In this document: one piece after another, positions 15,031 through 38,377 of the stretch | Numbering within the stretch: the stretch's first letter is position 1 | Layout: each line of letters starts with the position of its first letter | Virus record (IMG/VR): IMGVR_UViG_3300041411_000178 | Location: 160,005 to 224,004 of that record | Length of the DNA: 64,000 bases | Reading direction: 5' to 3' (one strand) | Position numbers and translations under genes: made by a program | The notes under the pieces: generated by a model | The model's database searches: none | What the model was told of the DNA's origin: nothing | Seen by the model: the letters and a program-made list of their open reading frames with translations, nothing else

Positions 15031-15618
15031 ATGAACTGGTATGTGCACGGGAAGACTTCCCGCTGTGTTGGATTTATCCAGGATGGGGGTGTCTGTGAAG
15101 GCGGTAACTGTGAGCACCTGGAAGATGGGGACCAGGCACACGGTTATTGCGGCGAGGCTGATAGCTTCGGCGAAGAACATCACCTGATGTGCCAACCGTG
15201 CTACGAGGTGTTTCTCGAAGAACGGAAGACAGAGCCCGTGGACTGCGAAGACTGCGGGATGGATCACCCCAGAAACGAGGGAATCAGTTACATCCCTTAT
15301 TTCTGCGACGAGTTGCCACGAGAGCGTAACCGCATTTTCGTGTGTAATACCTGTAAGGAACTTCCTGCACACAAGTACCGTCTTGAGCGGGATGAACGTG
15401 ACATGGAAGCCGCTAAACTGGAGGCTGAAATGAACGACGATAAAGCGCACGTCTCGCATGAAGACGGAGTACCGGAACCCCTCGACGATGATGACATCGA
15501 CGTCTATCCGGACCCAATCTTCGAACCGCGGGAGCCTGAGGAAGGCGAAGAGCCCGAGGAGCTGGAACTCGAGGAAGAAGACCACGACATTCCGTTCCCG
15601 GACGAGGAGCGTCATTAA
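15031..15618 (+). CDS. Cys/His-rich (putative zinc-binding) protein with a very acidic C-terminal tail
   Basis: CQPC, CEDC and CNTC pairs; tail EPEEGEEPEELELEEEDHD. Confidence 0.8.
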   Translation: MNWYVHGKTSRCVGFIQDGGVCEGGNCEHLEDGDQAHGYCGEADSFGEEHHLMCQPCYEVFLEERKTEPVDCEDCGMDHPRNEGISYIPYFCDELPRERNRIFVCNTCKELPAHKYRLERDERDMEAAKLEAEMNDDKAHVSHEDGVPEPLDDDDIDVYPDPIFEPREPEEGEEPEELELEEEDHDIPFPDEERH

Positions 15619-15818
15619 TGTGGCTTACCCTCCTGCTGATCGTAGCCGTTGGTATTGCCTTGGCAGGAACCTATATTCCCTGGAGTAGCATCCAGGGAAT
15701 GTCGGATATTCCTCGTAGGGCGGCCTGTGCCATTTATATTGCTAGCTGGATTGTACTGGCTGGTTTTGGCTTCGCGGGTATCGATTTGTTTTATTCTTAC
15801 AAGGAAGCACTGCGATGA
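15618..15818 (+). CDS. small membrane protein (2 predicted TM segments)
   Basis: Two hydrophobic stretches; TAATG coupling. Confidence 0.7.
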   Translation: MWLTLLLIVAVGIALAGTYIPWSSIQGMSDIPRRAACAIYIASWIVLAGFGFAGIDLFYSYKEALR

Positions 15819-16637: not shown

Positions 16638-17279
16638 ATGGATAACTATAAAGACGGAACGATAGCGTTTGACCGTATTACAGTTTTGGGGAAGGACTTT
16701 GTTGCGGGGACGTACAAGGACGACTTGGCTGTCTATCAATATGCCTTTGATGTTAAGCCGTTTGTAGCAGGCGGGAAGAAAAAGAAGAAGAACGCCCCAG
16801 AGAAGTATGACTATCAATGGGAAGGCTTTTTCAACATGATGGTCAACAATACCCGCATTCGACTGCATCCGGTTCTGAATGACTACGGGTTGTTCGAGAT
16901 GGAAAGAAAGCTTGAGCTGCTCAAAGAGAAGATGCAGTTCTTTGTGAAGGAACTCAAGACACGCCGTAAGACACCTGCTAAGGGCGATCGTTACGACAAG
17001 CAGTGGCTGAACAAACCGGATACCCCTTACTCAGGGCATGTGCACCTGACCATGCACAAGGACGGCGGTGGCAACCTTTCGGTAGCCGACTGTCATAAGT
17101 CCATCCACTGGTGGGTGGACTGTTACTTAGATCCGAGTGGCAAACCCGTCTACGACGAGTACTACGAAAAGTCGTTGAAGTCGATTGAAGAGTTTGCACG
17201 TGGGTTAGGCAAGGCTTGCAAGGCAATCCAAGAATTGCGCAAGTTCTTTGCCCGTGAACTCGAAAGCTCTCAAGGTTAA
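16638..17279 (+). CDS. hypothetical protein (213 aa)
   Basis: AGGAG RBS. Confidence 0.8.
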   Translation: MDNYKDGTIAFDRITVLGKDFVAGTYKDDLAVYQYAFDVKPFVAGGKKKKKNAPEKYDYQWEGFFNMMVNNTRIRLHPVLNDYGLFEMERKLELLKEKMQFFVKELKTRRKTPAKGDRYDKQWLNKPDTPYSGHVHLTMHKDGGGNLSVADCHKSIHWWVDCYLDPSGKPVYDEYYEKSLKSIEEFARGLGKACKAIQELRKFFARELESSQG

Positions 17280-17284
17280 GAGAG

Positions 17285-17301
17285 TTTCAAACCTACATTA
17301 T
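17285..17301 (+). promoter_or_regulatory. putative early promoter motif upstream of the chaperonin
   Basis: TTTCAAACCTACATTAT. Confidence 0.65.
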
Positions 17302-17349
17302 TACCCTGAGATACATTGTTTATATCAACCCAGCTACGGAGATTCTTCC

Positions 17350-19020
17350 ATGTACATGCAACTCTCTAATAACCGCAGTCATGGTGATATGCAGGTCCGC
17401 ACTACTCAAGATGTTGTTGAGGATGTAATGACCAACGTCCATGACGCGGTGGTTGCCACCATGGGTCCTAACGGCAAGCTTTCAGCCATTACTATCGGTA
17501 CCTCGGTGAAGGTTACCAAAGACGGTGTAACAGTCGCAAAGTCGCTGAAGTTTGTTAACCCATTCGAAGAAGCTGTAAACCGCATCATTCTGGAACCGGC
17601 AATCAAGACCGATGACGAATGCGGTGACGGTACCACCACCACCATTCTGTTGACCGGTGAACTGTACAGCCTGTACTCGCAGTTCCCTACTTACCGTGAA
17701 CGCAAGTTCATCGACAAGCTGTGCAACAAAACGATCGAAGAACTCAGCCGTATGTCGATCGCTGTGAACAACGACAGTCCAGAGTTGTACAGTCTGGCCC
17801 TGACGTCCTCTAACGGCGATGAGAAGCTGGCTGACGTCATTACCGACATCTATCACCAGGCTGCCGGTAAATACCCTGAGATCGAGCTCAAGGAAGGTCT
17901 GGGCGGGCAAGACCAGGTTGTGCGTTCCAACGGTCTGCCGGTGAACCTGATCTACAGCAACCCGTCGTTCTCCAAGAACGGCAACGGTACTGCGTCGGAA
18001 TTCACGCTCTTCGTCCCAATCGTTATCGATGACAACATCCGTAACGTAGATCCGCAGGTGCTGATCGGTCTGCTGAAAAAGGTAATGGACAGCGTTGGCA
18101 GCGAAGCTACCTTCCTGCTCATTGCTCGTTCGTTCGACAACCCGATCAACAGCCTGATCCTGCAACTGAACAACCAACTGAAACGTCAGGCGTTCATCTG
18201 CGCACAGACCAACTTCGGTGGTTCGGTTGGTACGCTGTTGATGCAGGACCTCTCGATCATGCTGGGCACCAGTATGGTTAAGGTGTTCTCGGACATCGTG
18301 ACCGTCGAACCGCGTTTTTGCGTCGACAAGCTGACCATTGGTTCCACCCGGTCGGTATTCGAAGCGACTTCCCTCGAGACCACTGACCGTATTGCCGCAC
18401 AGGTGAAATCGATCGAAGAAGAACTTAACAGCTACGAGCGTGGTGAGCGTTTCAGCATGCGTGCGCGTTTCAATGAGAAACGTCTGCGTGATCTGAAGGG
18501 CGAACTGATCACCATCTTCGTGGGCGGTGAAACTCAGTCCGAGATCAAGGAACGTATCGACCGTTTCGAAGACGTGTCGAAGGCTGTCAAATCAGCACTG
18601 GTGAACGGCATCCTGCCGGGTGTAGGTACTGCACTGATCACCGCTGGTGTGTTCGCCATGCAAAGTCTGGAAGATGAAATCGATACCGATCCTGTCTACG
18701 ACAAGATCATCAAGGCTTTCATCGAAGTGATCTTTGCACAGTACACCCTCCTGATGGGTCCTCTGATGTCGTTCAAGGGTACCGCCGAAGAAAAGGCTAC
18801 ACTCATGGAAGGTGTCTTGGACATGGACAACCCTGCACCGTTCACTGTTATGAACATGCGGGATAACACCACCGGTACTCCTCGTGACCTGGGGATCTAC
18901 GACACGGCTTACGCCTCTATCACTGCATTGCGTGGTGGCATGCAGACAGCCAAGATCCTCGCCAGCCTCGATAGCATCTTGATCGGGGACAAACTGGCTG
19001 CGGTTCATATCCAGTCTTAA
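17350..19020 (+). CDS. groEL: phage GroEL-like chaperonin (556 aa)
   Basis: TMGPNG, VTKDGVTVAK, DECGDGTTTT (ATP-binding), GGETQSEIKERIDRFED and GILPGVG; start set at ATG 17350 after GGAG; no GGM tail. Confidence 0.93.
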   Translation: MYMQLSNNRSHGDMQVRTTQDVVEDVMTNVHDAVVATMGPNGKLSAITIGTSVKVTKDGVTVAKSLKFVNPFEEAVNRIILEPAIKTDDECGDGTTTTILLTGELYSLYSQFPTYRERKFIDKLCNKTIEELSRMSIAVNNDSPELYSLALTSSNGDEKLADVITDIYHQAAGKYPEIELKEGLGGQDQVVRSNGLPVNLIYSNPSFSKNGNGTASEFTLFVPIVIDDNIRNVDPQVLIGLLKKVMDSVGSEATFLLIARSFDNPINSLILQLNNQLKRQAFICAQTNFGGSVGTLLMQDLSIMLGTSMVKVFSDIVTVEPRFCVDKLTIGSTRSVFEATSLETTDRIAAQVKSIEEELNSYERGERFSMRARFNEKRLRDLKGELITIFVGGETQSEIKERIDRFEDVSKAVKSALVNGILPGVGTALITAGVFAMQSLEDEIDTDPVYDKIIKAFIEVIFAQYTLLMGPLMSFKGTAEEKATLMEGVLDMDNPAPFTVMNMRDNTTGTPRDLGIYDTAYASITALRGGMQTAKILASLDSILIGDKLAAVHIQS

Positions 19021-19077: not shown

Positions 19078-19281
19078 ATGACGCCAGAAATGCAGCAGCT
19101 CTTTACCGGATCCAACCGGACCATATTGCTTATGTGGACCATCTTGGGAGTAGCAATCGGTAGCAAAACACTTTTAGGCAGTGTGTTAGTGTTGTCGTTT
19201 TTCGTCCTGATTGTAAAGACGAATTCCCATCTGGCCTTCATCGCGTCAATTCTGATTCCATTGGTTTTCATTTGGTTCTGA
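19078..19281 (+). CDS. small, almost entirely hydrophobic membrane protein (67 aa)
   Basis: GAGGA RBS; 2-3 hydrophobic segments. Confidence 0.7.
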   Translation: MTPEMQQLFTGSNRTILLMWTILGVAIGSKTLLGSVLVLSFFVLIVKTNSHLAFIASILIPLVFIWF

Positions 19282-20100: not shown

Positions 20101-20673
20101 ATGACCGCACAATTAAAAGCTGCAATTACAGCACCGGCTGTAATGGACGAAGAAGAGTACGCACTGGTATGTCGCGCACTGGAACCGTCCTTTGTTGACC
20201 ATTTCCATAGCCTGGGGGTTATGAAGAATGTACTGCGTGAGATGGTGTATGGTGTTGATCACCTCACTGACATGCTCAGGATGCCAGAGTGCCCAGTTGG
20301 CAAGACGCTGGTAACCATGGATCTCGAACACTACAAACTGGAATCGTTCTTCCTGTTTGACCAGTTGTTCCGGGCCACGAACAATGACTGCTGGAAGATT
20401 TCACTGCCGACTCCAACAGTCAAGAAAGAACTCGATGAATTCTTTAACCGGAGTTACATCGAAACGTTCCATTTCATTATGGGACGCATGGGAGTGGAAG
20501 AGCTGATGTTCAAGGTCGACCATGAGAGGTACTCGATCGAGTTCAACGAGATCATACCGGACAGCAAGTTGTATATCTTCCACTTCAATAACCTGGACAC
20601 ACGTCAGGGAATTAACCTGCCGTTTGCCCGCCGTCGTACGCAACATTCCTTGAAGGTCAAGCGAAATGATTGA
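20101..20673 (+). CDS. hypothetical protein, paralogue of 20933-21496
   Basis: AAGGAG RBS; FVDxF...ExVYGxDxLT...PxG shared. Confidence 0.8.
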   Translation: MTAQLKAAITAPAVMDEEEYALVCRALEPSFVDHFHSLGVMKNVLREMVYGVDHLTDMLRMPECPVGKTLVTMDLEHYKLESFFLFDQLFRATNNDCWKISLPTPTVKKELDEFFNRSYIETFHFIMGRMGVEELMFKVDHERYSIEFNEIIPDSKLYIFHFNNLDTRQGINLPFARRRTQHSLKVKRND

Positions 20674-20836
20674 TCCAAAAGATTTGCTCGACAAAGACGA
20701 TGATTGGGTCGCTAGTATGGTGGCAGACCCTATCCGTAAACAACAGCTTAAACGTCGCCGTAGGTTCTACACTGTGCTTGGCATTTCTTGCATTATTGCC
20801 GTGTTTATTGGCGCAGTGATTGGCTGGAAGGTGTAG
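20666..20836 (+). CDS. small single-pass membrane protein (56 aa)
   Basis: MIDPKDLL...KRRRRFYTVLGISCIIAVFIGAVIGWKV; overlaps the upstream stop; not in the ORF track. Confidence 0.6.
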   Translation: MIDPKDLLDKDDDWVASMVADPIRKQQLKRRRRFYTVLGISCIIAVFIGAVIGWKV

Positions 20837-20932: not shown

Positions 20933-21496
20933 ATGAGTGAAGCACTAAGAAAGTTGGAGGCTACCGATGGACTGATAACTAATCTCGCCCAAGTTACTGA
21001 AAGCAAACGCTTGGGTTATTTCAAGCACATCCTGAACGTAGAGTTTGTTGACACCTTCCTCAAATACATCCCCGATGTAAGGAAGCTGCAAGAGTTCGTC
21101 TACGGGATCGATTGCTTGACGGAAATTAGCAGGAGCAGTTCATTCCCATCTGGTCGATTGTTAAACAACATTGATATCAACGAGAAAGCCGCTGGCAAGT
21201 TCAACGAGCTCCGTTGGTTGACTCGCGACCAATCTTTTCTGGGCTGCCAAGTGGGTGCTGAAACCACAGAGTTGATCACCGAGTTTTTCAGTTACGAGTA
21301 TCCACGGTTGTTCGGCGAGTTGTTCGATAAGTCGCGCCTGCCATTCGCGACCTTCGCACTCGACGGTGTTTGGTATCACCTGACTTTTAACCGCAGCTTC
21401 AACAAACTGAGAACGCACTCTGCGATCAAGTTGACCAGCGCGGACAGAAGCAGGGAAGTGTATTTGCCTTTCCTCAGGACTCGAACTGGGGTTTGA
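20933..21496 (+). CDS. hypothetical protein, paralogue of 20101-20673
   Basis: Shared motifs as above; downstream of the promoter motif. Confidence 0.8.
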   Translation: MSEALRKLEATDGLITNLAQVTESKRLGYFKHILNVEFVDTFLKYIPDVRKLQEFVYGIDCLTEISRSSSFPSGRLLNNIDINEKAAGKFNELRWLTRDQSFLGCQVGAETTELITEFFSYEYPRLFGELFDKSRLPFATFALDGVWYHLTFNRSFNKLRTHSAIKLTSADRSREVYLPFLRTRTGV

Positions 21497-21510
21497 CGTA
21501 AGCTCGCCGT

Positions 21511-21560
21511 AATCTCCCGGGCGTTGGTTGCCTGGGGGATTATGGTTTCTTTTTTATTTG
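21511..21560 (+). terminator. intrinsic terminator
   Basis: AATCTCCCGGGC/GCCTGGGGGATT stem then ATGGTTTCTTTTTTATTT. Confidence 0.7.
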
Positions 21561-21602
21561 TACCGCTGTAACTTTGTAAAGACTACTAACAAGGAGTTCC
21601 AC

Positions 21603-23183
21603 ATGAATACCCCAATAAACAAAGAGGCCACTTACATGCCCGGGCCTGTTGGTAAAACCTTCACCGAAGAAGAGATGCTGAAAATAAACCCCCATGTCAG
21701 CAAGCTCGCGCCCAACCTCATGGACGGTTATGTTTTCGTTTGGAACAAAGAGCGCGACCTGTACGAGAACATCGGGACTAAGGCTTCAGTGTTGGGGAGT
21801 AACACCCCACATGAATACATTTGCCCTGTTTCTTTTACCATGAAAGGGAATTGGGAAAGTGATGACCCACTTCCTGAGGAAGACGCACAGGTCGGTGATT
21901 GCTGGATCCGGGAAAAACACTTCTGGGCAAGAACTTCCCAGAATATTTGGAAAGACTACGGGGATGTCAGTAACGTAGGTGCTATCCAGTACTGCTTCCT
22001 GGAAGACAACCCACCACCGGCACCAAAGCCTGTGATTTTCCGCAACGTTGGTAACCACGAACTTACAGCCACCATCATCGGTGATTTCGTCAACCGTGAG
22101 ATCGCCGATGCACATGCTCCCAAAGTTGGCCACGCAGGGGAAGCATATATTGCCGACAACACGGTCTTTCTTTGGGATGTATTTAACGGGACAGGTTGGA
22201 TAGAAAGCGGTAAAGTTGGGGAAATTTGGGAACCGCTTCCTCCGCCTACATCGGGACTTGCTGAACTTTTCAGAACCCTGCCGCGTTCCAGTATGTTAGG
22301 TCATGACCGTCACAAGGATCAACGCTCCAAAGAGCAAATCCTGCAAAGCCATTTCCATGATGATGTCAGAGCCGGGTACGGTGGGACCTTCGATCAATGG
22401 TGCAGTCAGAACGGTGATCTTAATGCCGTTCTTCGCGAAGCGGCTGGCAAAGACCCACAAGGTCTTGAACACCTGGTAGCCGTGCACAATCTCGAAGAGC
22501 AGCGGGTGCGTATGCACCGCCGTGACCTGTTGGCAGACGCCAAGGCTCATCCATCCCTGGACGATGCTGAGAAACTGCTGGCAGGGGCTCTGGAGACGCT
22601 TGAGGGCGAAGAAAGTGATGCTGCTTTCAAGGCTCTCGATGCGTTGAAGAAAGTCAAGAAAGATATGCGTCGTAAGCGTCGTAACTTCTGGCTTTTTGTC
22701 ATCACGTTCTGGGCTATCGTGGGTACGGGTGTTTACTTCCTGGGTAAGTGGTTGTCTACCCAGGTTGTTACCGGTCGCTATACCGTTCCAAAGACGTGCT
22801 CGGCTCCATTCGGCCCCGGCGTTATTCAGGGCATGCGTTACTACGACTACAGCTACAAGTCGTTGTTCGGTGTGCACATGACACTGGAGAGTACTGTCAG
22901 GGAAAGCACGATCGTTACCACGAACGGCCAAGAGTTCTCCATCTTCGGTCTATCGCCTCGTAACGAAGAGTCTGACGTACCCGGAGAGCCGATGGCTGAT
23001 CGAGTGCTGAAGGCTGCTGAGGTGGAAGTAGAAACTGCTCCTAAGCCTCCTAAGGGCAAATGGTGGCGCATGAACATCTGGACCAGCGACAAAGGCACAC
23101 AGCCAATGAAGCCAGCCGAGCTGTATTTGTTCGCGTCTGAGAAGTATACAACCATGGTCGCTTATAAGGACTTCTGTAAATGA
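21603..23183 (+). CDS. single-pass membrane protein (526 aa) with N-terminal tail-fibre-like repeat modules
   Basis: AAGGAG RBS before ATG 21603; RRKRRN then hydrophobic FWLFVITFWAIVGTGVYFLG. Confidence 0.85.
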   Translation: MNTPINKEATYMPGPVGKTFTEEEMLKINPHVSKLAPNLMDGYVFVWNKERDLYENIGTKASVLGSNTPHEYICPVSFTMKGNWESDDPLPEEDAQVGDCWIREKHFWARTSQNIWKDYGDVSNVGAIQYCFLEDNPPPAPKPVIFRNVGNHELTATIIGDFVNREIADAHAPKVGHAGEAYIADNTVFLWDVFNGTGWIESGKVGEIWEPLPPPTSGLAELFRTLPRSSMLGHDRHKDQRSKEQILQSHFHDDVRAGYGGTFDQWCSQNGDLNAVLREAAGKDPQGLEHLVAVHNLEEQRVRMHRRDLLADAKAHPSLDDAEKLLAGALETLEGEESDAAFKALDALKKVKKDMRRKRRNFWLFVITFWAIVGTGVYFLGKWLSTQVVTGRYTVPKTCSAPFGPGVIQGMRYYDYSYKSLFGVHMTLESTVRESTIVTTNGQEFSIFGLSPRNEESDVPGEPMADRVLKAAEVEVETAPKPPKGKWWRMNIWTSDKGTQPMKPAELYLFASEKYTTMVAYKDFCK

Positions 23184-27413: not shown

Positions 27414-27480
27414 GCAGCTATAACTACCTCCTACCCTTTGCGGGGTAGGAGGTAGTTAGCCTGTTTCTTTATTTTTTGTT
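27412..27480. terminator. bidirectional terminator at a convergent junction
   Basis: TAACTACCTCCTACCC/GGGTAGGAGGTAGTTA stem; T-rich run on plus, TTATAGCTGCTT tail on minus. Confidence 0.75.
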
Positions 27481-27493
27481 TTAACCAATTGCA

Positions 27494-27952
27494 TTAAGCA
27501 GCCATGGCCACTGGCTTCGGTTCGGTTGGGTTATTTACAAGTCGGTGTATTGTTACACCCGCCATGATAACCTTCTTCTTCCACGGCGTAACATTGAGCA
27601 CGTCCATGGATTCTTTCAGGATGGCGTCGATCTGTTTGCGTGTTACTTTCACCTGGATAGGCTTGCCGTTTACCACCTGGATAATCTTGTAAGTCGTACA
27701 GAGCTTATCGTGCAGTGTGGTGCACTGGGTGTATTCACCGATAGGGGGAAGAAGCCACCACAACCAGCGTGGAATAGTCGCCCCATCAGTTTTGAAGTTG
27801 GTCTCCACATCTACGTAACGAGTGGAGTTCTCCTCGCCGATGTAATAACGAAACCCAGGAATGGTATCCCAGATATCCTTGTTATTAAGCACACTGGCGG
27901 TTTTATCATAACGCAGTTGTTCTTCGGCGCTGAAACGCGTGAATGTGCTCAT
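27494..27952 (-). CDS. DUF1353-family protein
   Basis: FKTDGATIPRWLW...PIGEYTQCTTLHD...RKQIDAILKESM..LNV..WK matches the DUF1353 pattern. Confidence 0.85.
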   Translation of the reverse strand: MSTFTRFSAEEQLRYDKTASVLNNKDIWDTIPGFRYYIGEENSTRYVDVETNFKTDGATIPRWLWWLLPPIGEYTQCTTLHDKLCTTYKIIQVVNGKPIQVKVTRKQIDAILKESMDVLNVTPWKKKVIMAGVTIHRLVNNPTEPKPVAMAA

Positions 27953-29404: not shown

Positions 29405-30310
29405 TTACAGAACGAGTTCGAAAAGAGGACGCCAGCCGTGGCTGGGGTGAGTCGCGGCAGTTGTCAGGCTGACGTTCAGTGCGTCAGGGTTAGTACCACT
29501 GCCGCGGTTAATACAAACGTTGTTTTGCAGATCGGTGGAGAAGGTGATCCAGCTACCATTGATCAGATCATCCACGGATTTAATCCCCAGCGCCTCTGGA
29601 AAGCTACGGATCTGGAACGCGTATGGAAGGATAAGGTCGTACTCGCCCCCAATCTGATCTGCCGCAACCGCGCTGGTGCTCGACATCACCGCACGAGACG
29701 TTGGTACCCGCATGATGAGCTGGTGATCGCCTTTATTAACTGTCTTGGCCTGTGCGATGGTACCAAAGGTAGTCTTGGCATACGGTGCCCAGTCAGCACT
29801 TGGGAAGTTACCGTAGATAACGCCCGCGCGATACAACAATTCCCAGTTAATGTTAGAGTACAGCGCCTGGCTTGCGATAAAGAGGATTTTTCCTTTATAC
29901 ACAAACTTCAGCCACCCCAAGTCAGCGGCCGTGTTCTCAGTGTTTCCCGCTACGATAGTGCCGACAAAGTTTTTGCACTCTTGAGTACTGAACAGGTCAG
30001 ACATCGGCATTTTGCCAAAGTACCCGAAGTTCCAGTCGCCCCGCAACAGCGCTTGAGGACCAGGACCGGTATAAGGCATGTAAGCCAATACCTTGTTAGG
30101 CGTCAACGCTACTTCAGTGCCCTTGCGAGAGGCCACACGATAGTAGTACACCTGGTTACGCACAGCGGTGTTATCGGTGTAGGTCAATGTCCCGCCCGGA
30201 ACTACCGCTAACGATGCAGGGAGCGCGGCGTCAGCGATAGGTGTGACTGAGCGATAGATCGTGTAATCGTCCGCCGAGTTAGGGTCGGACCAATCAATTT
30301 TGATGGGCAT
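29405..30310 (-). CDS. tail-associated paralogue 5: FN3-like N-domain plus WxPVLEL-type domain
   Basis: PGPQALLRGDWNFGYFG, WLKFVYKGKILFIA, LYRAGVIYG and GWRPLFEL; resembles the phiKZ gp131-135-type family. Confidence 0.8.
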   Translation of the reverse strand: MPIKIDWSDPNSADDYTIYRSVTPIADAALPASLAVVPGGTLTYTDNTAVRNQVYYYRVASRKGTEVALTPNKVLAYMPYTGPGPQALLRGDWNFGYFGKMPMSDLFSTQECKNFVGTIVAGNTENTAADLGWLKFVYKGKILFIASQALYSNINWELLYRAGVIYGNFPSADWAPYAKTTFGTIAQAKTVNKGDHQLIMRVPTSRAVMSSTSAVAADQIGGEYDLILPYAFQIRSFPEALGIKSVDDLINGSWITFSTDLQNNVCINRGSGTNPDALNVSLTTAATHPSHGWRPLFELVL

Positions 30311-30321
30311 TTAACCCTCCG

Positions 30322-31266
30322 TTAAGCAGGAATTAATTCAAGAACAGGGACCCAAGAAATCCAGGCCCCAGCGGCAGAACCGGTAATCGCACGACCGAAG
30401 ACGTCAGACCAGTTAGAGTTACTGACCGACATGTTGCTAGTTCCACTGAAGTGCTGAGTGGCCATTAGTGGATAAGGAACACCAGAGGCGTCGCCCCACT
30501 TGAATGGCTGTAGCAGCGGGACGTCGGCGGCCAGGATTGCGGTGGTCATGGAGCACATCAACTCACACCACTCACTGCCTTTAAAGGTTGTGCGGTCCGG
30601 AACGTTTTGATCGGTTGGCAACGTACTGTTCTTGGGGATACGAACCAAGAAGCTATCGCTACCCACAGTGACAACCTTTTTCTGGTTGACCAAGGTGTTA
30701 ATGGCAGGCTGAGCACCCACAGCGGTAAGGTTAAACGGAGCAGCCCCAGGACCGTCGACACCATAAACTAAACCGGCGTTGTAGATCTGAGACCAGGTAG
30801 CCCCACCCTGCGCTGTAAAGGGTGCGTTAGGGAAGAACAGGATCTTTCCCTTAAACACGAACTTGTACCAACCTGTCATGGTGCCATCAGCAGGCGCACC
30901 GCCAATAGATGGAGAGCCAACGGCCGCACGTAAACCGGATATGGTGAACATCTGAGCGGCAGGAATGAAGCCCATGTAACCAGCATTCCAATCACCACGT
31001 AGTACCGTGTTGTTACCGGGACCCGTTTTGGAGAAGTTGCCGTACTGCATGCACTGGCTGTATTGTGTGGTAGCTCCGGCCTTCACTGCTTCCAGCATGT
31101 AGTAACGGACGCTTCTGTCTGGGACAGTAGTGTCCGTATACGTCACATCCGAAGCACCCAGCGTTACGGTGTTAGCAGGAAGCGTGTTCCAGGTGAATGG
31201 TGAGTCTGACCAGTACAGCGTCAGGGAGTCAACAGACATTGGAGACCAATCGATTTTGATAGACAT
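30322..31266 (-). CDS. tail-associated paralogue 4
   Basis: GPGNNTVLRGDWNAGYMG, WYKFVFKGKILF, YNAGLVYG and SWVPVLEL. Confidence 0.8.
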   Translation of the reverse strand: MSIKIDWSPMSVDSLTLYWSDSPFTWNTLPANTVTLGASDVTYTDTTVPDRSVRYYMLEAVKAGATTQYSQCMQYGNFSKTGPGNNTVLRGDWNAGYMGFIPAAQMFTISGLRAAVGSPSIGGAPADGTMTGWYKFVFKGKILFFPNAPFTAQGGATWSQIYNAGLVYGVDGPGAAPFNLTAVGAQPAINTLVNQKKVVTVGSDSFLVRIPKNSTLPTDQNVPDRTTFKGSEWCELMCSMTTAILAADVPLLQPFKWGDASGVPYPLMATQHFSGTSNMSVSNSNWSDVFGRAITGSAAGAWISWVPVLELIPA

Positions 31267-31275
31267 GGAATCCCC

Positions 31276-32220
31276 TTAGACTTCAATCAGCTCCAGCACA
31301 GGCCACCAGCCGTAGTTCAGGCCGTTCCAAGTAGCGGCGTTACGGTTGGCAATGCCGGTACGGTTAGCAGCAGTGTTTCCGCGAACAAGGTTGTTGGCAG
31401 TGTTACCCGCTGCAACACGTTCTTGAACAATGCTGCCGGTGGTAACACCTGTGGACGCCATGTACAGATCTGCGACCGTGGCTTGTTGAACGTTGGCCAT
31501 ACGCTGTAGATCGGGGCAATACATGGAAAGCGGGTACGCCAGGTCGTTCCACTCATTTGGCCACAGTTCGGTTGGTTCGGTTGCGGCAGGAGTACCAGGA
31601 TAGCGGACCAAGGTGTCATCAAAGCCCGTCATGCAGCGTACACGGAACTGTTCGCCACCGATAGTTACCTTGGCACTCTGATTAACGTTAGCGCCGGCGT
31701 TGGAAGGTCCTGGACCGTCTACGCCGTATACTAACCCGAGGTCATAAAGCACTTTCCAGCTGAGACTGCCACACAGCGGGCCGTTAGGAACGTACAGAAC
31801 CTTGCCATTACGGATCCACTTATGCCAGATAGGACCTTGTTGGTTGACCACTCCAACGGTGAGACCAACTGCTGTACGAAGATCGTTGGTATTGATCAGT
31901 TCGCCAGAAGACATCGAACCGAAATAGCCGTAAGAGAAGTCACCGATCTGGATAGTAGTGGGCCCAGGGCCTTTCCGTGGTACAGCACGGATAGGGATGT
32001 TTGGAGTGCTTTGTTTGTCGGCACCCACGATGGTTTCAATCACGTAGTAATACAACGTGTCACGAACCGTAGTGGTATCGGTATAGGTGTTTTCACCCGC
32101 CGAGAGAGTGGCGATTGGGTTAGCGAGGTTAGCCCGATCGAGCGGAGCAGTCCCGCGATAGATTTTCGTTACGAACGTTCCTGGAGCACCCAGGTTAGTC
32201 CAGTTTAATACTGTATCCAT
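31276..32220 (-). CDS. tail-associated paralogue 3
   Basis: GPGPTTIQIGDFSYGYFG, WHKWIRNGKVLY, LYDLGLVYG and GWWPVLEL. Confidence 0.8.
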   Translation of the reverse strand: MDTVLNWTNLGAPGTFVTKIYRGTAPLDRANLANPIATLSAGENTYTDTTTVRDTLYYYVIETIVGADKQSTPNIPIRAVPRKGPGPTTIQIGDFSYGYFGSMSSGELINTNDLRTAVGLTVGVVNQQGPIWHKWIRNGKVLYVPNGPLCGSLSWKVLYDLGLVYGVDGPGPSNAGANVNQSAKVTIGGEQFRVRCMTGFDDTLVRYPGTPAATEPTELWPNEWNDLAYPLSMYCPDLQRMANVQQATVADLYMASTGVTTGSIVQERVAAGNTANNLVRGNTAANRTGIANRNAATWNGLNYGWWPVLELIEV

Positions 32221-32231
32221 TGTTCAATTCC

Positions 32232-33245
32232 TTAGGCGACGTATGAGCCAGTAATTGTGAATGCTTTAAGCGTTGGGCTTTCGTTTGTCCCCCTGACCCC
32301 GGCCGCTCTCATGGCCTGGCCAGAAAAGCTATACTGAACCTGAGGAAGCTGATAGGCCCAATTCTTCTGTCGTACGTTCTGCGCTCTCTGAGCGACCGTA
32401 ACGCCTGTCCATTGACGGACGTCCGTAATGACAGGGGCAAATGGACCGGGTGTTCTGTAAAGTAGTTGATAGGGATCTTTGGCTTCTGTGTCCGGAATAA
32501 GTTCTAGGACGGGTCTCCAGAAGTGTTGGTTAAAGCTGCCTGATATACGGTCAGTCTTGAGGGCGACTCGATACGCGCCCATGATCTGTCCGCTACCGCC
32601 ATCACCGCGGATGATCGTCTGGTTGACGTTAGTGGAAACCGTCTCCATTACAATCGAATCAGGACTTGAGTTAGTCCAGCCCAGAGGAGCGTAACCGAAG
32701 GTTGCAAATTTGGGAGTGATACCTCCATCTGTTGCAACACTACAACGACCTAGCAGTTGGCTCCACTCACCGGCATGAATGTTGGTACTGCCGCTGTTGG
32801 TAACGGGGTCAACATCGTAACCTTTGACCAGTCGAGGTTTGAGCACCCACAGCTTCTCTCCCTCGTACTTCGGCATCTGAATAAACTGATGCTTAGGTGT
32901 GGCGAGAGGATACTTGCCGTTATCCCGAGTGCCGTATACCAAACCAGCCGCATACAGATCCGCCCACGAAATATTGGTCCGGAAAGGTCGCTTGGCAATA
33001 TAGATGATCTTGCCATTCCAGATAAACTTTAACCAGTGGTTAGCACCCTGAGTAAGCCCGCTATTGTCATCACCCTGGTACAGCCCGGCAGCACCTGCTA
33101 CTTGAGAAATGCCAAACAACTGTGTGTCTGTTACTTCGCCAAAGTAACCCAAGGTCTCATCACCGCCAATCAGCGCCTTAGGACCAGGCCCTGAGTTGTT
33201 GATGTAAATCGTTTTACCCCCCGTAGAGAGTAGTGCTTCATTCAT
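32232..33245 (-). CDS. tail-associated paralogue 2
   Basis: Start moved to ATG 33245 (MNEALLST) after GAGGTG, paralleling MNEAMLAT of the upstream gene; PGPKALIGGDETLGYFG...FWRPVLEL. Confidence 0.8.
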   Translation of the reverse strand: MNEALLSTGGKTIYINNSGPGPKALIGGDETLGYFGEVTDTQLFGISQVAGAAGLYQGDDNSGLTQGANHWLKFIWNGKIIYIAKRPFRTNISWADLYAAGLVYGTRDNGKYPLATPKHQFIQMPKYEGEKLWVLKPRLVKGYDVDPVTNSGSTNIHAGEWSQLLGRCSVATDGGITPKFATFGYAPLGWTNSSPDSIVMETVSTNVNQTIIRGDGGSGQIMGAYRVALKTDRISGSFNQHFWRPVLELIPDTEAKDPYQLLYRTPGPFAPVITDVRQWTGVTVAQRAQNVRQKNWAYQLPQVQYSFSGQAMRAAGVRGTNESPTLKAFTITGSYVA

Positions 33246-33257
33246 AACGTTCACCTC

Positions 33258-33285
33258 TGGCATACAAACCTCCCCGGAGGGAGGT
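33258..33285 (-). terminator. intra-operon hairpin with a TTGTATGCC tail
   Basis: Minus strand ACCTCCC-TCCG-GGGAGGT then TTGTATGCCAG. Confidence 0.5.
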
Positions 33286-33300
33286 GAGTATGTTTAACAG

Positions 33301-34627: not shown

Positions 34628-37600
34628 TTAAGGTACTACCGCACCCGAAGCGCCAACCCACTCAACACCGTCCCAGAAGAACGTGAGGATGGTACGGCTA
34701 CCGGTCAGGCTTGGAGGAGCACCTGTGTTCCAGACCAGCACAGTAGCGCCAGTTGGAGCAAAGGTGATTGCCCCGGCAGCACCGTTGACTTTCACCACCA
34801 GGGTTTGAGCCCGAGCCGGAGCTTTAGGACCATCACCGAGGGTAATCGTCTTGGCGGTTGCACCAGTGTTGTTGACAATCAATGTACCAGTGGTCAGTGG
34901 ATCTACCGAGCCCGTAGCTGCGAGTGTCTGAATCGACAGATCGTAGCGGTTGAACTCGATCCACTGCGTGCCTTTGTAAACGTACGTTTTACCGTCGTTC
35001 GCAGGACCCGAGATGCCAGGAGTAGGTGCGGTGTAAACCACCCACGTCTTGTCACCTTTACGCAGGTACAGGTTGGTGTCCGCTGGGACATCAGCAAAAC
35101 CAGGTACGAATGCAGTGATCTGCGCCTGGATCTTGCCGAAGGCCGTGAGGACCGTGTCAGCAGCAGTGATAGCACCACCGGTGGCAAAGCTGATACCCGC
35201 CAGCGGAGTAGACCGTGTACGAGCCGGAGTGTAGTAGAGGTTGGTAGTCCCTTCCACCACCGCATCGGTAGTACCCGGGGAGGCTACCAGACCAACGTAA
35301 ACAGTACCCGACCAGCGGAACTGAGCATTGGTTGCGAGGGAGATGTAGATCTTCCCTGCTTCACCAGTTGCTGGGAAAGCCGCTTGGTTAGCAAACTCCA
35401 CCACGTCATCAACGTAGCTCGGCAGTTGACCTGCCGGAACGGTACCGTTAACCAGCGTTGCAACCGTCTGGCCCAGTGCTGCGAGAGGAACACCACCCAG
35501 GCTACCGATCGTAGGGGCATTGTACGCACCCCAGGAACCGACGTCCTGACCGTTGAGACGCACACGCATGTACGGCTGGTTGTCAGCAGGTGGTTCGTCG
35601 AACTGAGGAGGAAACTCCAGCTCTACCCACTCGCCTTCGTTGGTTTCGCTACCTTCAACCAGTTGGCGAACGTAAACCTTACCAGCAATCATGGCAGGGG
35701 CTTCATCAACCGGCAGCATGACCCACTCGTTGCCGAGACGGACTACTTTACCAGCAGACAGTTCTGGCGAGTTAACATCACCCGCAACCAGTTGACCCCA
35801 GTACACCCAACCCGACACAGCCGACTTGTAGTAAACCTTGAAGCTGTCGGAAACAGCCCAGTCACCCACGTTACCGGTAAAGCCAGCGCTTGGAGCATCC
35901 ACACCAGCAGGCAGAGTAATCCAGGACGAACCTTTCTCACCCTTGTCACCTTTCTTGCCGATACCGACAGGACCAGGAACACCCTGGATACCCTGAGGAC
36001 CGCGAACCAGACCGATGTCGATCCACTCACCGCCGTTAGCGGTAGTCCAGATGGCCAGGTTGTTACCAACCAGATAACCATCACCCAGCGAACCGGTAGG
36101 GACCGCAGTTTCCAGCGCAGCCAGCGTTGGGTAAGCACCCAGGATGTTGATCGAGGTACCTGCTTCACCCTTCTCACCATCGTTACCCTGAGGACCAGGC
36201 AGACCCGTGATGTCGTACGGACCATCCCACTCACCATCGGTCAAGACATACAGCATCTTGTCGTTGGAAGTGAACCAGCCGTCGCCTTCTTCAGAGTTAG
36301 CCGGCAGAGGCAGATAGGTAGGGCCTGCAACAGTACCACGCAGCTTCAGACCGATACCTTGGATACCACGCTCACCAGGAGCGCCCACTGGACCGCAATC
36401 GACCCACACGCCGCCCAGAGAGATCTGGAGGTGCTTGTCCAGGTCAACGTAGGCTTTACCGCCGTTGAGGAGTGGATCAGGTACGTTGGCATCTTCAGCG
36501 GTCAGGATCTTGATGATCGTGATCGAGGAACCGTTGGCGCCCGGAGCACCGTCGCTACCGTCTTCACCTTTGAACTGACCCAGATTCACCCATGCAGCAC
36601 CGATGTGGGCATACAGAGTGTTGGTATCACGGACAGCGTAGACGTCCTGTTCTTCCGGAGAGGCCGGCAGGGAGCCGTAAGTGGATACCGAACCCTTGAT
36701 GATGATGTTGGTACCGTTAGTACCGTTGGTACCTACCAGGCTGGAAAGGAACTCGAGTTCCGAACCACTGTGGCCGTTATCCAGCCAGAGCTGGTAAGTC
36801 GATTGACCACGGAAAGGACCCACGTCCACCCAAACAGCATCAGTGAGGATGTGCAGGTGACCGTCGTCAGCAGTGACGTAACCGTCTTGCTCTTCTGGGT
36901 TTTGGATATTGCCCAGTTGAGGAGCGTTAGCCACGGTGCCTTTAACGGTGAGGTTCTTACCACGAGGACCTTCAGGACCTGGCACAGTGGACTTCAACGA
37001 AAGCAACCACTGTTGCAGGGTGCCGCCGTAGCCGTCTTCAACAGCCAGATCGTAAGCCGACAGACCACCTACCGAGCCGAGGTCAACGTATTGCTCAGCG
37101 TCAGTCACCCAAACGTACAGGTGGCTACCGACGTACCAGGCTTCAGTTGCAACACCTGGGGTTGGCAGCAGCGCTTCGGTATCTTTGGCACCCATCACTT
37201 CGAAAGGCGAACGAGGAGGACCTTCAGGACCTGGGTCACCAGGAGTGGTCGACTTCAGGGAAGCAACGAACTCGGCTTCAGTACCGGTGTTACCGATGTT
37301 CAGCCAGGATTGATAAGCGGACTTACCTACCAGGCTGGCCAGCCATTGTGCCTGAGTACCCGCGAAGCCGTCAGCCTGAGCAACCTGGAACGCCGACTTA
37401 CCTTCTGGACCTTCCAGACCAATCGAACTCCAGACTGGATCAGCATCAGGATCGCTACCGTCACCACCCGGTACCAGCAACCAAAGGTCGCTCTTCCAGA
37501 TATACGCGTCACCGATCGATACAGCGTTAACCGGAGGAAGTGCTTGTGCATCGGGCCAGGTACCCAAAAGGGTCACACCGCGGTCGCCCAACAGGGAACC

Positions 37601-38377
37601 CGAGTCGGACCAATCCACACCGTTCCAGACACGCAGGGAGCCGGTCACGAAGTAAGCGGTACCTTCAGCCAGGCCTTCGGTAGGAATAGCGTCCAGTTCG
37701 GCTTGGCTGTTCAGCGTACCGATAACCTTAACCGAACCCACAGAACCGGCAGCGCCTTTAAGGCTCAGCAGGAAGTCCGCCTCGGTACCGGTGTTACCCT
37801 GATCCAACCAGATCTGGTAAGTGCTCTTGCCGACCAGGCTGGTCAGCCACTGGGATTGGTTACCCTGGAAACCACCGTCTTGAGCGATTTCGAAAGCCGA
37901 CTTGCCCGCATCGCCTTTCAGGCCGATGGTGACCCAGCCGTCAGGCTGAGGGATGAGCAGCCAGATGTCGCTCTTCCAGATGTAGGCATCACCCACTTCA
38001 TTCAGCGTGTGATCCGGGAGCGGCTGGTTATCGGGCCAGGTGCCGAGCAGGGTAATACCCCGTGGACCCAGCAGTAGACCAGAGCTGATCCATTCGGTCA
38101 GGTTCCAGACAACCAGCGAACCTTCAACGAAGTAGGCGTCGCCTTTGGCGAGGTCTTCAGTTGGCAGTGCGTCCAGATCGGTCTGGGAAATGTTGCCGAT
38201 CACATTCAGACCGCCAACTACCAGAGCCTGGAATTGATCGAGCAGATAACGGGTACGGTTCGCCAGCAGAATTGCTGCACGGTTATCCGGACCATCCGGA
38301 CCACCACGGACCGGTTCCCCTGTTTCAATAAGGGGGATGTCTTCGGGAAATTCACTTACTTCTTCAATGTTAGCCAT
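34628..38377 (-). CDS. long tail fibre protein with collagen-like G-X-Y stretches (1249 aa)
   Basis: N-terminal ETGEPVRGGPDG...LANRTRYL attachment-type motif; many GPxGxxG runs; repeated GKSAYQxWL and LP...GDAY...W modules; PxDxxxYxR motifs near the C-terminus. Confidence 0.88.
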   Translation of the reverse strand: MANIEEVSEFPEDIPLIETGEPVRGGPDGPDNRAAILLANRTRYLLDQFQALVVGGLNVIGNISQTDLDALPTEDLAKGDAYFVEGSLVVWNLTEWISSGLLLGPRGITLLGTWPDNQPLPDHTLNEVGDAYIWKSDIWLLIPQPDGWVTIGLKGDAGKSAFEIAQDGGFQGNQSQWLTSLVGKSTYQIWLDQGNTGTEADFLLSLKGAAGSVGSVKVIGTLNSQAELDAIPTEGLAEGTAYFVTGSLRVWNGVDWSDSGSLLGDRGVTLLGTWPDAQALPPVNAVSIGDAYIWKSDLWLLVPGGDGSDPDADPVWSSIGLEGPEGKSAFQVAQADGFAGTQAQWLASLVGKSAYQSWLNIGNTGTEAEFVASLKSTTPGDPGPEGPPRSPFEVMGAKDTEALLPTPGVATEAWYVGSHLYVWVTDAEQYVDLGSVGGLSAYDLAVEDGYGGTLQQWLLSLKSTVPGPEGPRGKNLTVKGTVANAPQLGNIQNPEEQDGYVTADDGHLHILTDAVWVDVGPFRGQSTYQLWLDNGHSGSELEFLSSLVGTNGTNGTNIIIKGSVSTYGSLPASPEEQDVYAVRDTNTLYAHIGAAWVNLGQFKGEDGSDGAPGANGSSITIIKILTAEDANVPDPLLNGGKAYVDLDKHLQISLGGVWVDCGPVGAPGERGIQGIGLKLRGTVAGPTYLPLPANSEEGDGWFTSNDKMLYVLTDGEWDGPYDITGLPGPQGNDGEKGEAGTSINILGAYPTLAALETAVPTGSLGDGYLVGNNLAIWTTANGGEWIDIGLVRGPQGIQGVPGPVGIGKKGDKGEKGSSWITLPAGVDAPSAGFTGNVGDWAVSDSFKVYYKSAVSGWVYWGQLVAGDVNSPELSAGKVVRLGNEWVMLPVDEAPAMIAGKVYVRQLVEGSETNEGEWVELEFPPQFDEPPADNQPYMRVRLNGQDVGSWGAYNAPTIGSLGGVPLAALGQTVATLVNGTVPAGQLPSYVDDVVEFANQAAFPATGEAGKIYISLATNAQFRWSGTVYVGLVASPGTTDAVVEGTTNLYYTPARTRSTPLAGISFATGGAITAADTVLTAFGKIQAQITAFVPGFADVPADTNLYLRKGDKTWVVYTAPTPGISGPANDGKTYVYKGTQWIEFNRYDLSIQTLAATGSVDPLTTGTLIVNNTGATAKTITLGDGPKAPARAQTLVVKVNGAAGAITFAPTGATVLVWNTGAPPSLTGSRTILTFFWDGVEWVGASGAVVP

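What the first reader, a model, noticed from the sequence alone, without database searches (positions are those of the whole stretch)
21723..22220. Tail-fibre repeat modules reused in the cytoplasmic part of a membrane protein
Seen: the 526-aa membrane protein carries three segments resembling repeat modules of the tail fibre 13 kb away. DGYVFVWNKERDLYENIG resembles GSHLYVWVTDAEQYVDLG. KGNWESDDPLPEEDAQVGDCWIREKHFW resembles LGTWPDNQPLPDHTLNEVGDAYIWKSDIW. IIGDFVNREIADAHAPKVGHAGEAYIADNTVFLW...GWIESGKVG resembles ILGAYPTLAALETAVPTGSLGDGYLVGNNLAIW...EWIDIGLVRG. The collagen G-X-Y linkers are absent. RRKRRN before the single hydrophobic segment suggests N-in topology (positive-inside rule), leaving a two-Cys C-domain outside. 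Inference: it could be a membrane scaffold or chaperone for fibre assembly, a trimerising membrane protein built from fibre parts, or a decoy for defences that sense tail proteins.
Basis: partly seen in the sequence, partly recalled or inferred. Interest (0 to 1): 0.65.

Follow-up and report, generated by a model that had tools for sequence, protein, structure and literature searches.

The report
Tail-fibre modules in phage membrane protein
A soil jumbo phage related to Pseudomonas phage EL encodes a single-pass inner-membrane protein of an uncharacterised family, and the part of it facing the cell interior is built from at least two small domains that otherwise occur, in this genome, only in the shaft of the phage's collagen-like tail fibre; what the protein does is still unknown.

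Summary
A profile built only from the 11 repeats of the window's tail fibre (34628-38377, minus strand) hits the membrane protein (21603-23183, 526 aa) at E 4e-6 against all 1,234 ORFs of the 224-kb genome. Nothing else scores. Segment 1 is not significant against the fibre (510 of 3000 shuffles score as well), but it folds like segment 3 and aligns to it (hhalign 77%). A fourth fibre-type motif (AGYGGTFDQW) is marginal.

The protein belongs to an unannotated family of at least 168 clusters that includes EL gp149 and Noxifer gp238. All members share a basic stretch, one membrane helix and a roughly 110-145-aa beta-sandwich with two invariant cysteines. The N-in topology is supported in 139 of 145 members. 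The fibre-type arm is an accessory present in 29 of 164 members, varies in module number, and is under purifying selection.

Function is unknown. I favour an envelope-acting, possibly lysis-related, protein with an adaptor arm (about 30%) over a fibre scaffold (about 20%). The trimer prediction gave no verdict.

The parts
21603..23183 (+). Gene for the 526-aa bitopic membrane protein (P0002), stop codon included
   Evidence: ORF list and translation. AAGGAG at 21591-21596. 19 close homologues and 168 clusters of distant ones.
21506..21556 (+). Terminator-like hairpin (18 pairs) with a T-run, between the upstream 187-aa gene and the target. It contains the spurious TTG start at 21528.
21651..21800 (+). 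It is folded, but its link to the fibre is only indirect.
   Evidence: pLDDT about 80 with strand-helix-3 strands. Not significant against the fibre HMM. hhalign to M3 77%, E 2e-5. dN/dS 0.14-0.25.
21822..21977 (+). It is a 'WPD/PLP...GD.(Y/W)I' type fibre bead.
   Evidence: Fibre HMM domain at 78-121. 0 of 3000 shuffles reach its score. The family profile hits the fibre at E 6e-14, at fibre residues 109-139 and 269-299. phrog_3904 (tail fibre) matches residues 79-126 at E 4.8e-4.
22038..22238 (+). It is an 'IIG...helix...GEAY...W..W..G' type fibre bead.
   Evidence: Fibre HMM domain at 178-205. 0 of 3000 shuffles reach its score. The family profile hits the fibre at E 3.7e-17, best at fibre residues 740-791 (iE 3e-8). 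pLDDT 74-87.
22332..22427 (+). Fourth fibre-type motif (residues 244-275, AGYGGTFDQW). It resembles the fibre's YGGT..QW..SL repeats. Support is marginal.
   Evidence: Family profile against fibre residues 443-457 gives E 0.01-0.03. hhalign 66%. 9 of 3000 shuffles reach its score. The same motif type occurs in the Noxifer gp238 arm.
22428..22685 (+). Conserved cytoplasmic helices ending in the basic stretch RRKRRN (residues 356-361)
   Evidence: Helices 263-386 in the models. Invariant K314, H316, P317, S318 and the DAAFKALDALKKV block.
22686..22754 (+). Single transmembrane helix (residues 362-384)
   Evidence: Hydropathy peak found in every family member. The positive-inside rule gives N-in in 139 of 145 members.
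22755..23180 (+). Periplasmic beta-sandwich domain (residues 385-526) with invariant C399 (22797-22799) and C525 (23175-23177)
   Evidence: AF2 model of residues 335-526 with 93 sequences: pLDDT 88.4. The two cysteines are invariant in 93 aligned members. dN/dS 0.04-0.09. No clear PDB or Atlas fold match.
34628..38377 (-). Collagen-like tail fibre gene (P0001, 1249 aa), the only other carrier of the modules in the genome
   Evidence: phrog_3904 tail fibre at E 1.4e-164. 11 bead repeats and 12 G-X-Y runs. Whole-genome scan.
37907..38056 (-). Fibre repeat A2 (residues 108-157), the counterpart of M2. A second copy, A4 (residues 268-326), lies at 37400-37576.
35993..36154 (-). Fibre repeat A10 (residues 742-795), the best counterpart of M3
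17248..19020 (+). Phage chaperonin (GroEL/Cpn60) gene heading the conserved gene cluster in which the target lies
   Evidence: phrog_5725 at E 1.7e-121. Synteny Cpn60 ... 187-aa gene - target holds in EL and in five metagenomic relatives, including ones with no arm.

Best explanation
Shown:
- The gene encodes a single-pass inner-membrane protein, N-terminus in the cytoplasm and C-terminus in the periplasm. It belongs to an unannotated family found in jumbo phages, with phage EL gp149 and Noxifer gp238 as cultured members.
- The family's constant core is a cytoplasmic amphipathic helix, a basic stretch, one membrane helix and a 110-145-residue periplasmic beta-sandwich closed by two invariant cysteines.
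- In this phage's lineage the cytoplasmic N-terminus has grown by adding small 'bead' domains of the type that alternate with collagen triplets in the shaft of the phage's own tail fibre. There are two clear copies, one diverged copy and a marginal fourth motif, all without the collagen linkers.
- These domains are folded and under purifying selection. Their number and order change between close relatives while the periplasmic domain barely changes.

Inferred:
- The core acts in the envelope. The arm is an accessory protein-binding or self-association module that tunes or localises that activity. It is not a part needed for fibre assembly.
- My favoured concrete mechanism, at about 30%, is a lysis-related role: a class-III-holin-like protein or a lysis regulator whose cytoplasmic arm is the regulatory side, as in phiKZ gp142.
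- The overall confidence below refers to the anatomy and the add-on reading, not to the lysis role.
For: Module homology:
- Fibre-only HMM gives E 1e-6 to 4e-6, with no other ORF in the genome scoring.
- Reciprocal profiles give E 6e-14 and 3.7e-17.
- Shuffle controls give 0 of 3000.
- The Foldseek BFVD search of the model returns mainly phage tail-fibre and collagen-like proteins at E down to 1.5e-7.

Core family:
- 168 clusters at E <= 1e-3. In nearly all of the 144 representatives examined there is one membrane helix followed by a C-domain with two cysteines at fixed places.
- EL gp149 matches only residues 362-525.

Topology: 139 of 145 members follow the positive-inside rule.

Add-on reading:
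- Only 29 of 164 members carry modules.
- Syntenic orthologues with a 70-80-residue N-terminus and no module sit in the same Cpn60 cluster.
- Modules are gained, lost or duplicated among 20 close homologues.
- dN/dS is 0.05-0.29 in the modules, 0.62 in the linker and 0.04-0.09 in the C-domain.

Lysis lean:
- The N-in/C-out single helix with soluble domains on both sides is the topology of T4 T and of the experimentally shown phiKZ holin gp142 (PMC12894885).
- The genome has an endolysin (genome 14130-15026) and a spanin pair (genome 131247-132111) but no recognisable holin, and no homologue of phiKZ gp142-144.
- The gene lies in a deeply conserved cluster headed by the phage chaperonin, whose reported client in EL is the endolysin gp188 (PMC7185714). 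Three membrane proteins lie in that cluster.
Against: - There is no experimental datum on any family member.
- The periplasmic domain has no significant fold match, including none to the T4 T periplasmic domain. It has no Pfam, PHROG, NCBIfam or PADLOC hit.
- Noxifer carries both a gp142-type holin (used in PMC12894885) and a member of this family, so the family is probably not the primary holin there.
- The gene is not next to the endolysin or spanins in any genome examined.
- 526 aa is very large for a holin.
- Segment 1 is not significantly fibre-like by sequence.
- The synteny with the chaperonin may simply reflect conserved genome order.
Confidence: 0.6

Rival explanations
1. Membrane-anchored platform or chaperone for the tail fibre or virion. 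The cytoplasmic bead modules bind like modules of nascent fibre chains, or the fibre's chaperone, and hold fibre or tail assembly at the inner membrane.
For: The modules are homologous to those of the cognate fibre and occur in no other protein of the genome. The gene lies 4-13 kb from the tail-fibre gene block: chaperone at 27494-27952, five virion-protein paralogues and the fibre. The modules are under purifying selection. Capsid assembly at the inner membrane is known for nucleus-forming phages (general knowledge, not tested here).
Against: 135 of 164 family members, including syntenic orthologues and EL gp149, lack the modules. Arm composition varies among close phages whose fibres keep the same architecture at 68-76% identity. 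The module-to-fibre identity is only about 27%, so there was no recent exchange. There are no collagen linkers to register with a triple helix. This reading gives no reason for a strongly conserved periplasmic domain.
Confidence: 0.2
2. Superinfection-exclusion or envelope-remodelling protein. The periplasmic beta-sandwich blocks entry of, or signals about, other phages. The arm only oligomerises or stabilises the protein.
For: It is a bitopic protein with a conserved periplasmic domain, as in known exclusion proteins (HK97 gp15 and T4 Imm/Sp, from general knowledge). The family is absent from phiKZ but present in EL, Noxifer, Lu11, DT01 and HRDY3. The N-terminal region is highly plastic.
Against: The gene is single-copy, syntenic and present in every EL-like genome examined, which looks like a core gene rather than an accessory one. 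There is no similarity to any known exclusion protein or PADLOC model.
Confidence: 0.15
3. Decoy or sponge for a host defence that recognises tail-fibre modules.
For: Fibre-like domains are made without being part of the virion architecture. Module content turns over quickly.
Against: There is no direct evidence. A decoy needs neither a membrane anchor nor a conserved periplasmic domain. The modules are only about 27% identical to the fibre's, which makes for poor mimicry. Purifying selection, not diversifying selection, acts on the modules.
Confidence: 0.04
4. Virion protein: a short fibre whose hydrophobic helix inserts into the host membrane during infection, with the C-terminal beta-sandwich as its tip.
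For: The order of parts (bead modules, long helices, beta-sandwich tip) resembles a fibre. A BFVD structural hit is a 246-aa Noxifer protein labelled 'virion structural protein', the same length as Noxifer gp238.
Against: Minimal family members of 165-190 aa have nothing fibre-like. The basic stretch plus a 20-23-residue hydrophobic helix is a standard signal-anchor in 139 of 145 members. The gene lies in the plus-strand non-structural cluster, separated by hairpins from the structural block. The RefSeq label of Noxifer gp238 is 'hypothetical protein'.
Confidence: 0.05

Closest known systems
Pseudomonas phage EL gp149 (YP_418182, 294 aa, hypothetical protein) and its Elvirus orthologues
   Same: Same gene position (chaperonin gp146, gp147, gp148, gp149). 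Same juxtamembrane helix, basic stretch, membrane helix and two-cysteine C-domain. 35% identity over residues 362-525, profile E 2.9e-53.
   Different: The EL gp149 N-terminus (about 160 aa) has no fibre-type module in its sequence and gives no PHROG hit. The window's protein has about 240 extra residues of bead modules.
Bead (non-collagen) repeats of collagen-like phage tail fibres (phrog_3904 type; fibres of Cronobacter GAP31, Ralstonia RP12, Erwinia Rebecca, PhiPA3)
   Same: Sequence profile matches for M2 and M3. The model's best structural matches in BFVD are these fibres.
   Different: There are no G-X-Y linkers, no fibre N-terminal attachment region and no receptor-binding end. The modules are placed on the cytoplasmic side of a membrane protein.
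Class III holins: T4 gpt (T) and phiKZ gp142 (PMC12894885)
   Same: One membrane helix, N-in/C-out, with soluble domains used for regulation. T has a periplasmic globular domain with one disulfide (general knowledge). gp142 has a cytoplasmic regulatory domain.
   Different: No sequence or fold similarity was detected. The protein is much larger and is not in a lysis cassette. Noxifer has both a gp142-type holin and a member of this family.
Noxifer gp238 (YP_009609219, 246 aa)
   Same: A family member (profile E 1.6e-34) whose cytoplasmic N-terminus carries a fibre-type 'GF.G.EE.W..FL' motif hitting phrog_35690, a family that the window's fibre matches at E 1e-32.
   Different: It has only the short helical motif and no bead module.

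Membership tests
EL gp149 family of bitopic jumbo-phage membrane proteins (unannotated; defined here) | Profile similarity over the juxtamembrane helix, membrane helix and C-domain | tested here: met
   tblastn to nine Elvirus-type phage records (EL, held under two accessions, among them) at E 1e-14 to 7e-20. The profile of the C-half finds 168 clusters. The profile hits EL, DT01 and Noxifer at E 3e-53 to 2e-34.
EL gp149 family of bitopic jumbo-phage membrane proteins (unannotated; defined here) | Single membrane helix preceded by a basic stretch (N-in) | tested here: met
   RRKRRN followed by residues 362-384. 139 of 145 members have more K+R before the helix than after it. This is a prediction only, with no experiment.
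EL gp149 family of bitopic jumbo-phage membrane proteins (unannotated; defined here) | C-terminal beta-rich domain with two invariant cysteines, one 12-26 residues after the helix and one at the penultimate position | tested here: met
   C399 and C525 are invariant in alignments A1, A2 and A3. Model pLDDT 88.
EL gp149 family of bitopic jumbo-phage membrane proteins (unannotated; defined here) | Position downstream of the phage chaperonin cluster | tested here: met
Collagen-like tail fibre (phrog_3904) | Bead repeat modules matching the fibre-repeat profile | tested here: met
   M2 and M3 match. M1 does not match by sequence.
Collagen-like tail fibre (phrog_3904) | G-X-Y collagen runs between the modules | tested here: not met
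   0 runs of at least 3 triplets, against 12 in the fibre
Collagen-like tail fibre (phrog_3904) | Fibre N-terminal attachment region and C-terminal distal domains | tested here: not met
   BLASTP and profile matches are confined to the repeats
Collagen-like tail fibre (phrog_3904) | Trimeric assembly | tested here: inconclusive
   The prediction with three copies of residues 17-212 gave no verdict
Class III holin | One TMD, N-in/C-out | tested here: met
   (prediction)
Class III holin | Homology to T4 gpt or phiKZ gp142 | tested here: not met
   No Pfam hit at E <= 1 other than a weak HRDC match. gp142 finds nothing in the genome. No fold match.
Class III holin | Gene within a lysis cassette with endolysin and spanins | tested here: not met
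   Endolysin homologue at genome 14130-15026 and spanins at genome 131247-132111. The target is at genome 181607-183187.
Class III holin | Timed, uncoupler-triggerable lethality that releases endolysin | not testable with these tools
   Needs expression assays like those in PMC12894885
i-spanin | N-terminal TMD, coiled-coil periplasmic domain, partner lipoprotein gene | tested here: not met
   The periplasmic domain is a beta-sandwich. The downstream gene has no lipobox. A separate spanin pair with lipobox LLTSGC exists elsewhere in the genome.
Tail fibre assembly chaperone | Similarity to phrog_1158 / DUF1353-type chaperones | tested here: not met
   That family is matched by a different gene, 27494-27952

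The most novel reading that the evidence does not exclude
The arm is a sensor that couples an envelope event, most plausibly the timing of lysis, to the state of tail-fibre assembly. Free fibre chains or their chaperone bind the membrane-tethered bead modules and hold the core inactive. When the fibre pool has been built into virions the core is released. This would be an assembly checkpoint for lysis in nucleus-forming jumbo phages, built by copying fibre domains onto a membrane protein.
Probability: 0.06. Interest if true: 0.85.

Novelty: new variant of a known kind. Interest (0 to 1): 0.5.

Why it matters
- Tail-fibre repeat domains are thought of as parts of the virion. Here they sit, folded and under selection, on the cytoplasmic side of a conserved membrane protein. 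This shows that these modules are general-purpose building blocks that phages move into non-virion proteins.
- The work also defines a sizeable family, at least 168 sequence clusters, with a confident model of its periplasmic domain. The family has no name in Pfam, PHROGs or NCBIfam. It sits in a fixed place next to the phage chaperonin in EL-like jumbo phages.
- These phages have no identified holin and few known membrane proteins, so the family is a concrete candidate for envelope or lysis control. It can be tested in the cultured phage EL (gp149).

Tried and rejected
- Trimer prediction of residues 17-212 with three copies: score 0.00, no verdict. This is not evidence either way.
- Foldseek against PDB with the whole model and with the C-half model: nothing at E <= 0.001.
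- VIA-align wide search: only generic long-helix matches. For the beta-sandwich the best were weak (DUF3244 3d33_B, Z 6.4, 79 residues; PmoD 6cpd_B, Z 6.0).
- ESM Atlas by fold (TM below 0.5) and by features (scores below 0.9): no lead.
- PDB sequence search with the fibre and with the family profile: nothing.
- Pfam, NCBIfam and PADLOC on the protein and on long or short relatives: nothing. PHROGs gave only the tail-fibre hit on the arm.
- Fibre 'B' repeat HMM against the protein: not significant on its own (E 2.5).
- Search for a conserved partner gene next to distant family members: none was found. Only the EL-like synteny holds.
- phiKZ gp142, gp143 and gp144 and the PG_binding_1 family against the own genome: no hit.
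- The complementary-distribution argument for a holin role was dropped, because Noxifer has both gene types.
- Whole-record search of ENA and Logan contigs through their loci is not possible. IMG/VR relatives were used instead.
- Megablast of the region against 50,697 phage genomes: no match.
- Literature: no paper mentions EL gp149 or YP_418182.
- Sequencing runs: the stretch is found in soil and rhizosphere metagenomes. No RNA holder is on record, so expression was not examined and read laying was not used.
Full report
**What is at the locus**

The finding lies in a 526-aa ORF, window 21603-23183 on the plus strand (P0002).
- Its ATG follows an AAGGAG at 21591-21596.
- A longer TTG-initiated reading (21528) starts inside an 18-pair hairpin with a T-run (21506-21556) that separates the gene from the upstream 187-aa gene, so I discard it.
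It matches the PHROG tail-fibre family phrog_3904 at E 1.4e-164.
- The window is the last 64 kb of a 224,004-bp IMG/VR virus record with direct terminal repeats.
- Its only cultured relatives for this gene are Pseudomonas phage EL and other Elvirus members of the Chimalliviridae.
- The DNA occurs in soil and rhizosphere metagenomes.

**Checking the observation**

The fibre contains 11 copies of a module of about 50 residues. These alternate with 12 runs of three or more G-X-Y triplets, plus six copies of a 26-residue 'YGGT..QW..SL' motif.

- It scores P0002 at E 1.1e-6 among 386 six-frame ORFs of the window, and at 4.1e-6 among 1,234 ORFs of the whole genome.
- No other ORF scores better than E 0.25.
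- In 3000 shuffles of each segment none reaches the real score.

I then ran the reciprocal test with profiles built from 19 homologues of the membrane protein, with no fibre sequence in them.
- The profile of segment 2 hits the fibre at E 6e-14, at residues 109-139 and 269-299.
- The profile of segment 3 hits it at E 3.7e-17, best at residues 740-791.
- Profile-profile probabilities are 94.7% and 95.8%.

Segment 1 fails these tests: E 0.36, hhalign 2%, and 510 of 3000 shuffles score as well. It is nevertheless predicted as a folded unit with the same strand-helix-three-strand order as segment 3 (pLDDT about 80). Its family profile aligns in register with that of segment 3 (77%, E 2e-5). I take it as a diverged copy, moderately supported.

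Support is marginal: reciprocal E 0.01-0.03, and 9 of 3000 shuffles score as well.

P0002 has no collagen run, only G-X-Y doublets such as GPVGKT directly before module 1. These resemble the GPRGIT and GDRGVT that precede fibre modules.

A Foldseek search of the AlphaFold model against predicted viral structures returns mainly phage tail fibres and collagen-like proteins as top hits, at E down to 1.5e-7.

Verdict on the observation: real for two modules, indirect for the third. The similarity is old (26-27% identity) rather than a recent copy.

**What the protein is**

Only the C-terminal third of P0002 has relatives among 50,697 phage genomes. EL gp149 (294 aa, hypothetical) and its orthologues match residues 362-525.

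A word search found 19 closer homologues on metagenomic contigs of 215-232 kb.
- Their alignment shows a near-invariant C-terminal half from about residue 314: helices, RRKRRN, one hydrophobic helix and a 142-residue domain.
- The N-terminal half is a mosaic. Modules 1, 2, 3 and the short motif are present, absent, duplicated or reordered from one phage to the next.

A profile of the C-half, searched against 1.84 billion representative proteins, finds 168 clusters.
- In nearly all of the 144 representatives examined (a few are fragments) there is one hydrophobic helix.
- Behind it lie 110-145 residues with exactly two cysteines, one 12-26 residues after the helix and one at or next to the penultimate residue.
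- The N-terminus before the helix ranges from about 25 to 587 residues.
- The positive-inside rule gives N-in for 139 of 145 members, with mean K+R of 5.8 before the helix and 1.8 after it.
- With 93 diverse sequences the C-half folds confidently (pLDDT 88.4) as a long helix followed by a beta-sandwich.
- The invariant cysteine pair at the two ends of the sandwich fits a periplasmic disulfide.
- No solved or Atlas structure matches it convincingly. No Pfam, PHROG, NCBIfam or PADLOC model matches the core.

**The arm is an add-on**
- Only 29 of 164 family members carry fibre-type modules. These are the close group plus ten distant clusters, some with an estimated eight copies by eye.
- Noxifer gp238 carries only the short fibre motif.
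- Orthologues with a 70-80-residue N-terminus and no module occupy the same genomic slot: chaperonin, a small membrane protein, genes of about 196 aa and 190 aa, another small membrane protein, a 187-aa gene, then this gene.
- EL gp149 has a low-complexity N-terminus instead.
- Against three relatives, dN/dS is 0.05-0.29 in the modules, 0.62 in the linker after them and 0.04-0.09 in the periplasmic domain. The modules are therefore functional, but evolve two to three times faster than the core.
- The fibres of five related complete genomes stay 68-76% identical to P0001 over their whole length. The arm's make-up does not track the fibre.

**How it might work**

Nothing here measures function, so this part is inference. 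The core must act at the envelope, because minimal members consist of little else.

Points in favour of a lysis-related role:
- The topology is that of class III holins. The one holin shown experimentally in a chimallivirus, phiKZ gp142, is of this class and uses its cytoplasmic domain to bind a regulator (PMC12894885).
- The present genome has an endolysin (homologue of EL gp188, genome 14130-15026) and an i-spanin/o-spanin pair (genome 131247-132111, lipobox LLTSGC). It has no recognisable holin and no homologue of phiKZ gp142-144.
- The gene lies in a deeply conserved cluster headed by the phage chaperonin, whose reported client in EL is the endolysin (PMC7185714).

Points against it:
- Noxifer has both a gp142-type holin and a member of this family.
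- The gene is never adjacent to the endolysin or spanins.
- There is no fold similarity to T4 T.
- The protein is very large for a holin.

I put a lysis-related role (holin-like or regulator) at about 30%, a fibre or virion docking platform at about 20%, superinfection exclusion or envelope remodelling at about 15%, a virion component at about 5% and a decoy at about 4%. The rest is unassigned. The homotrimer prediction returned no verdict and is not used.

**Comparison with the known, and novelty**

Shuffling of fibre modules between virion proteins is familiar. I found no report of them in the cytoplasmic part of a membrane protein, and no paper on EL gp149.
- The protein fails the defining features of a tail fibre: it has no collagen, no attachment end and no distal end.
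- It also fails those of a spanin and of a fibre chaperone.
- It meets only the topological feature of class III holins.
- It is best filed as a member of a new, unnamed family with a lineage-specific arm of fibre domains. I rate this a new variant of a known kind (phage bitopic envelope proteins with soluble regulatory domains), of moderate interest.

The decisive experiments are feasible in phage EL and are listed under next steps.

Noticed in passing
window 20666-20836 (+): A small ORF (56 aa) between the 190-aa and 187-aa genes ends in KRRRRF followed by a 22-residue hydrophobic tail, so it looks like a tail-anchored membrane protein. A 57-62-aa gene sits at the same place in all syntenic relatives.
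   Followed up: partly
window 19078-19281 (+) and 15618-15818 (+): Two more small multi-helix membrane ORFs (67 aa and 66 aa) flank the chaperonin gene. A 69-81-aa gene follows Cpn60 in every relative examined. They are candidate holin-type proteins in a genome with no annotated holin.
   Followed up: partly
window 20101-20673 and 20933-21496 (+): The 190-aa and 187-aa genes upstream of the target are paralogues (26% identity, E 8e-8). Both match EL gp148. They have no PHROG family.
   Followed up: partly
window 29405-34560 (-): Five tandem paralogues (301-419 aa) of phrog_1062/phrog_3589 'virion structural protein' lie between a tail assembly chaperone (27494-27952) and the fibre. The equivalent genes in relatives carry Kelch-type beta-propeller Pfam hits.
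   Followed up: no
window 27421-27458: A perfect 17-pair hairpin sits at the junction of the plus-strand cluster and the minus-strand structural block. It is probably a bidirectional terminator.
   Followed up: no
own genome G000:C1:131247-132111 (-), outside the window: An i-spanin-like ORF (182 aa, N-terminal membrane helix) overlaps an out-of-frame ORF with a lipobox (LLTSGC). This looks like a spanin pair standing apart from the endolysin homologue at G000:C1:14130-15026.
   Followed up: partly
L011 (Noxifer) 4653-5393; L012 (pPa_SNUABM_DT01) 4650-5489: Cultured jumbo phages Noxifer, DT01, Lu11 and HRDY3, and a phage recorded as a Bacillus phage (AgentSmith), each hold one member of the family. 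phiKZ holds none. The match in the phage recorded as infecting Bacillus would be odd for a protein with a periplasmic disulfide.
   Followed up: partly
P0036, P0047, P0049, P0068, P0169 (distant family members): Another set of long family members carries a different, unannotated N-terminal region with a recurring PMPPVK motif and an 'EHRGDGYFVL' block instead of fibre modules.
   Followed up: no
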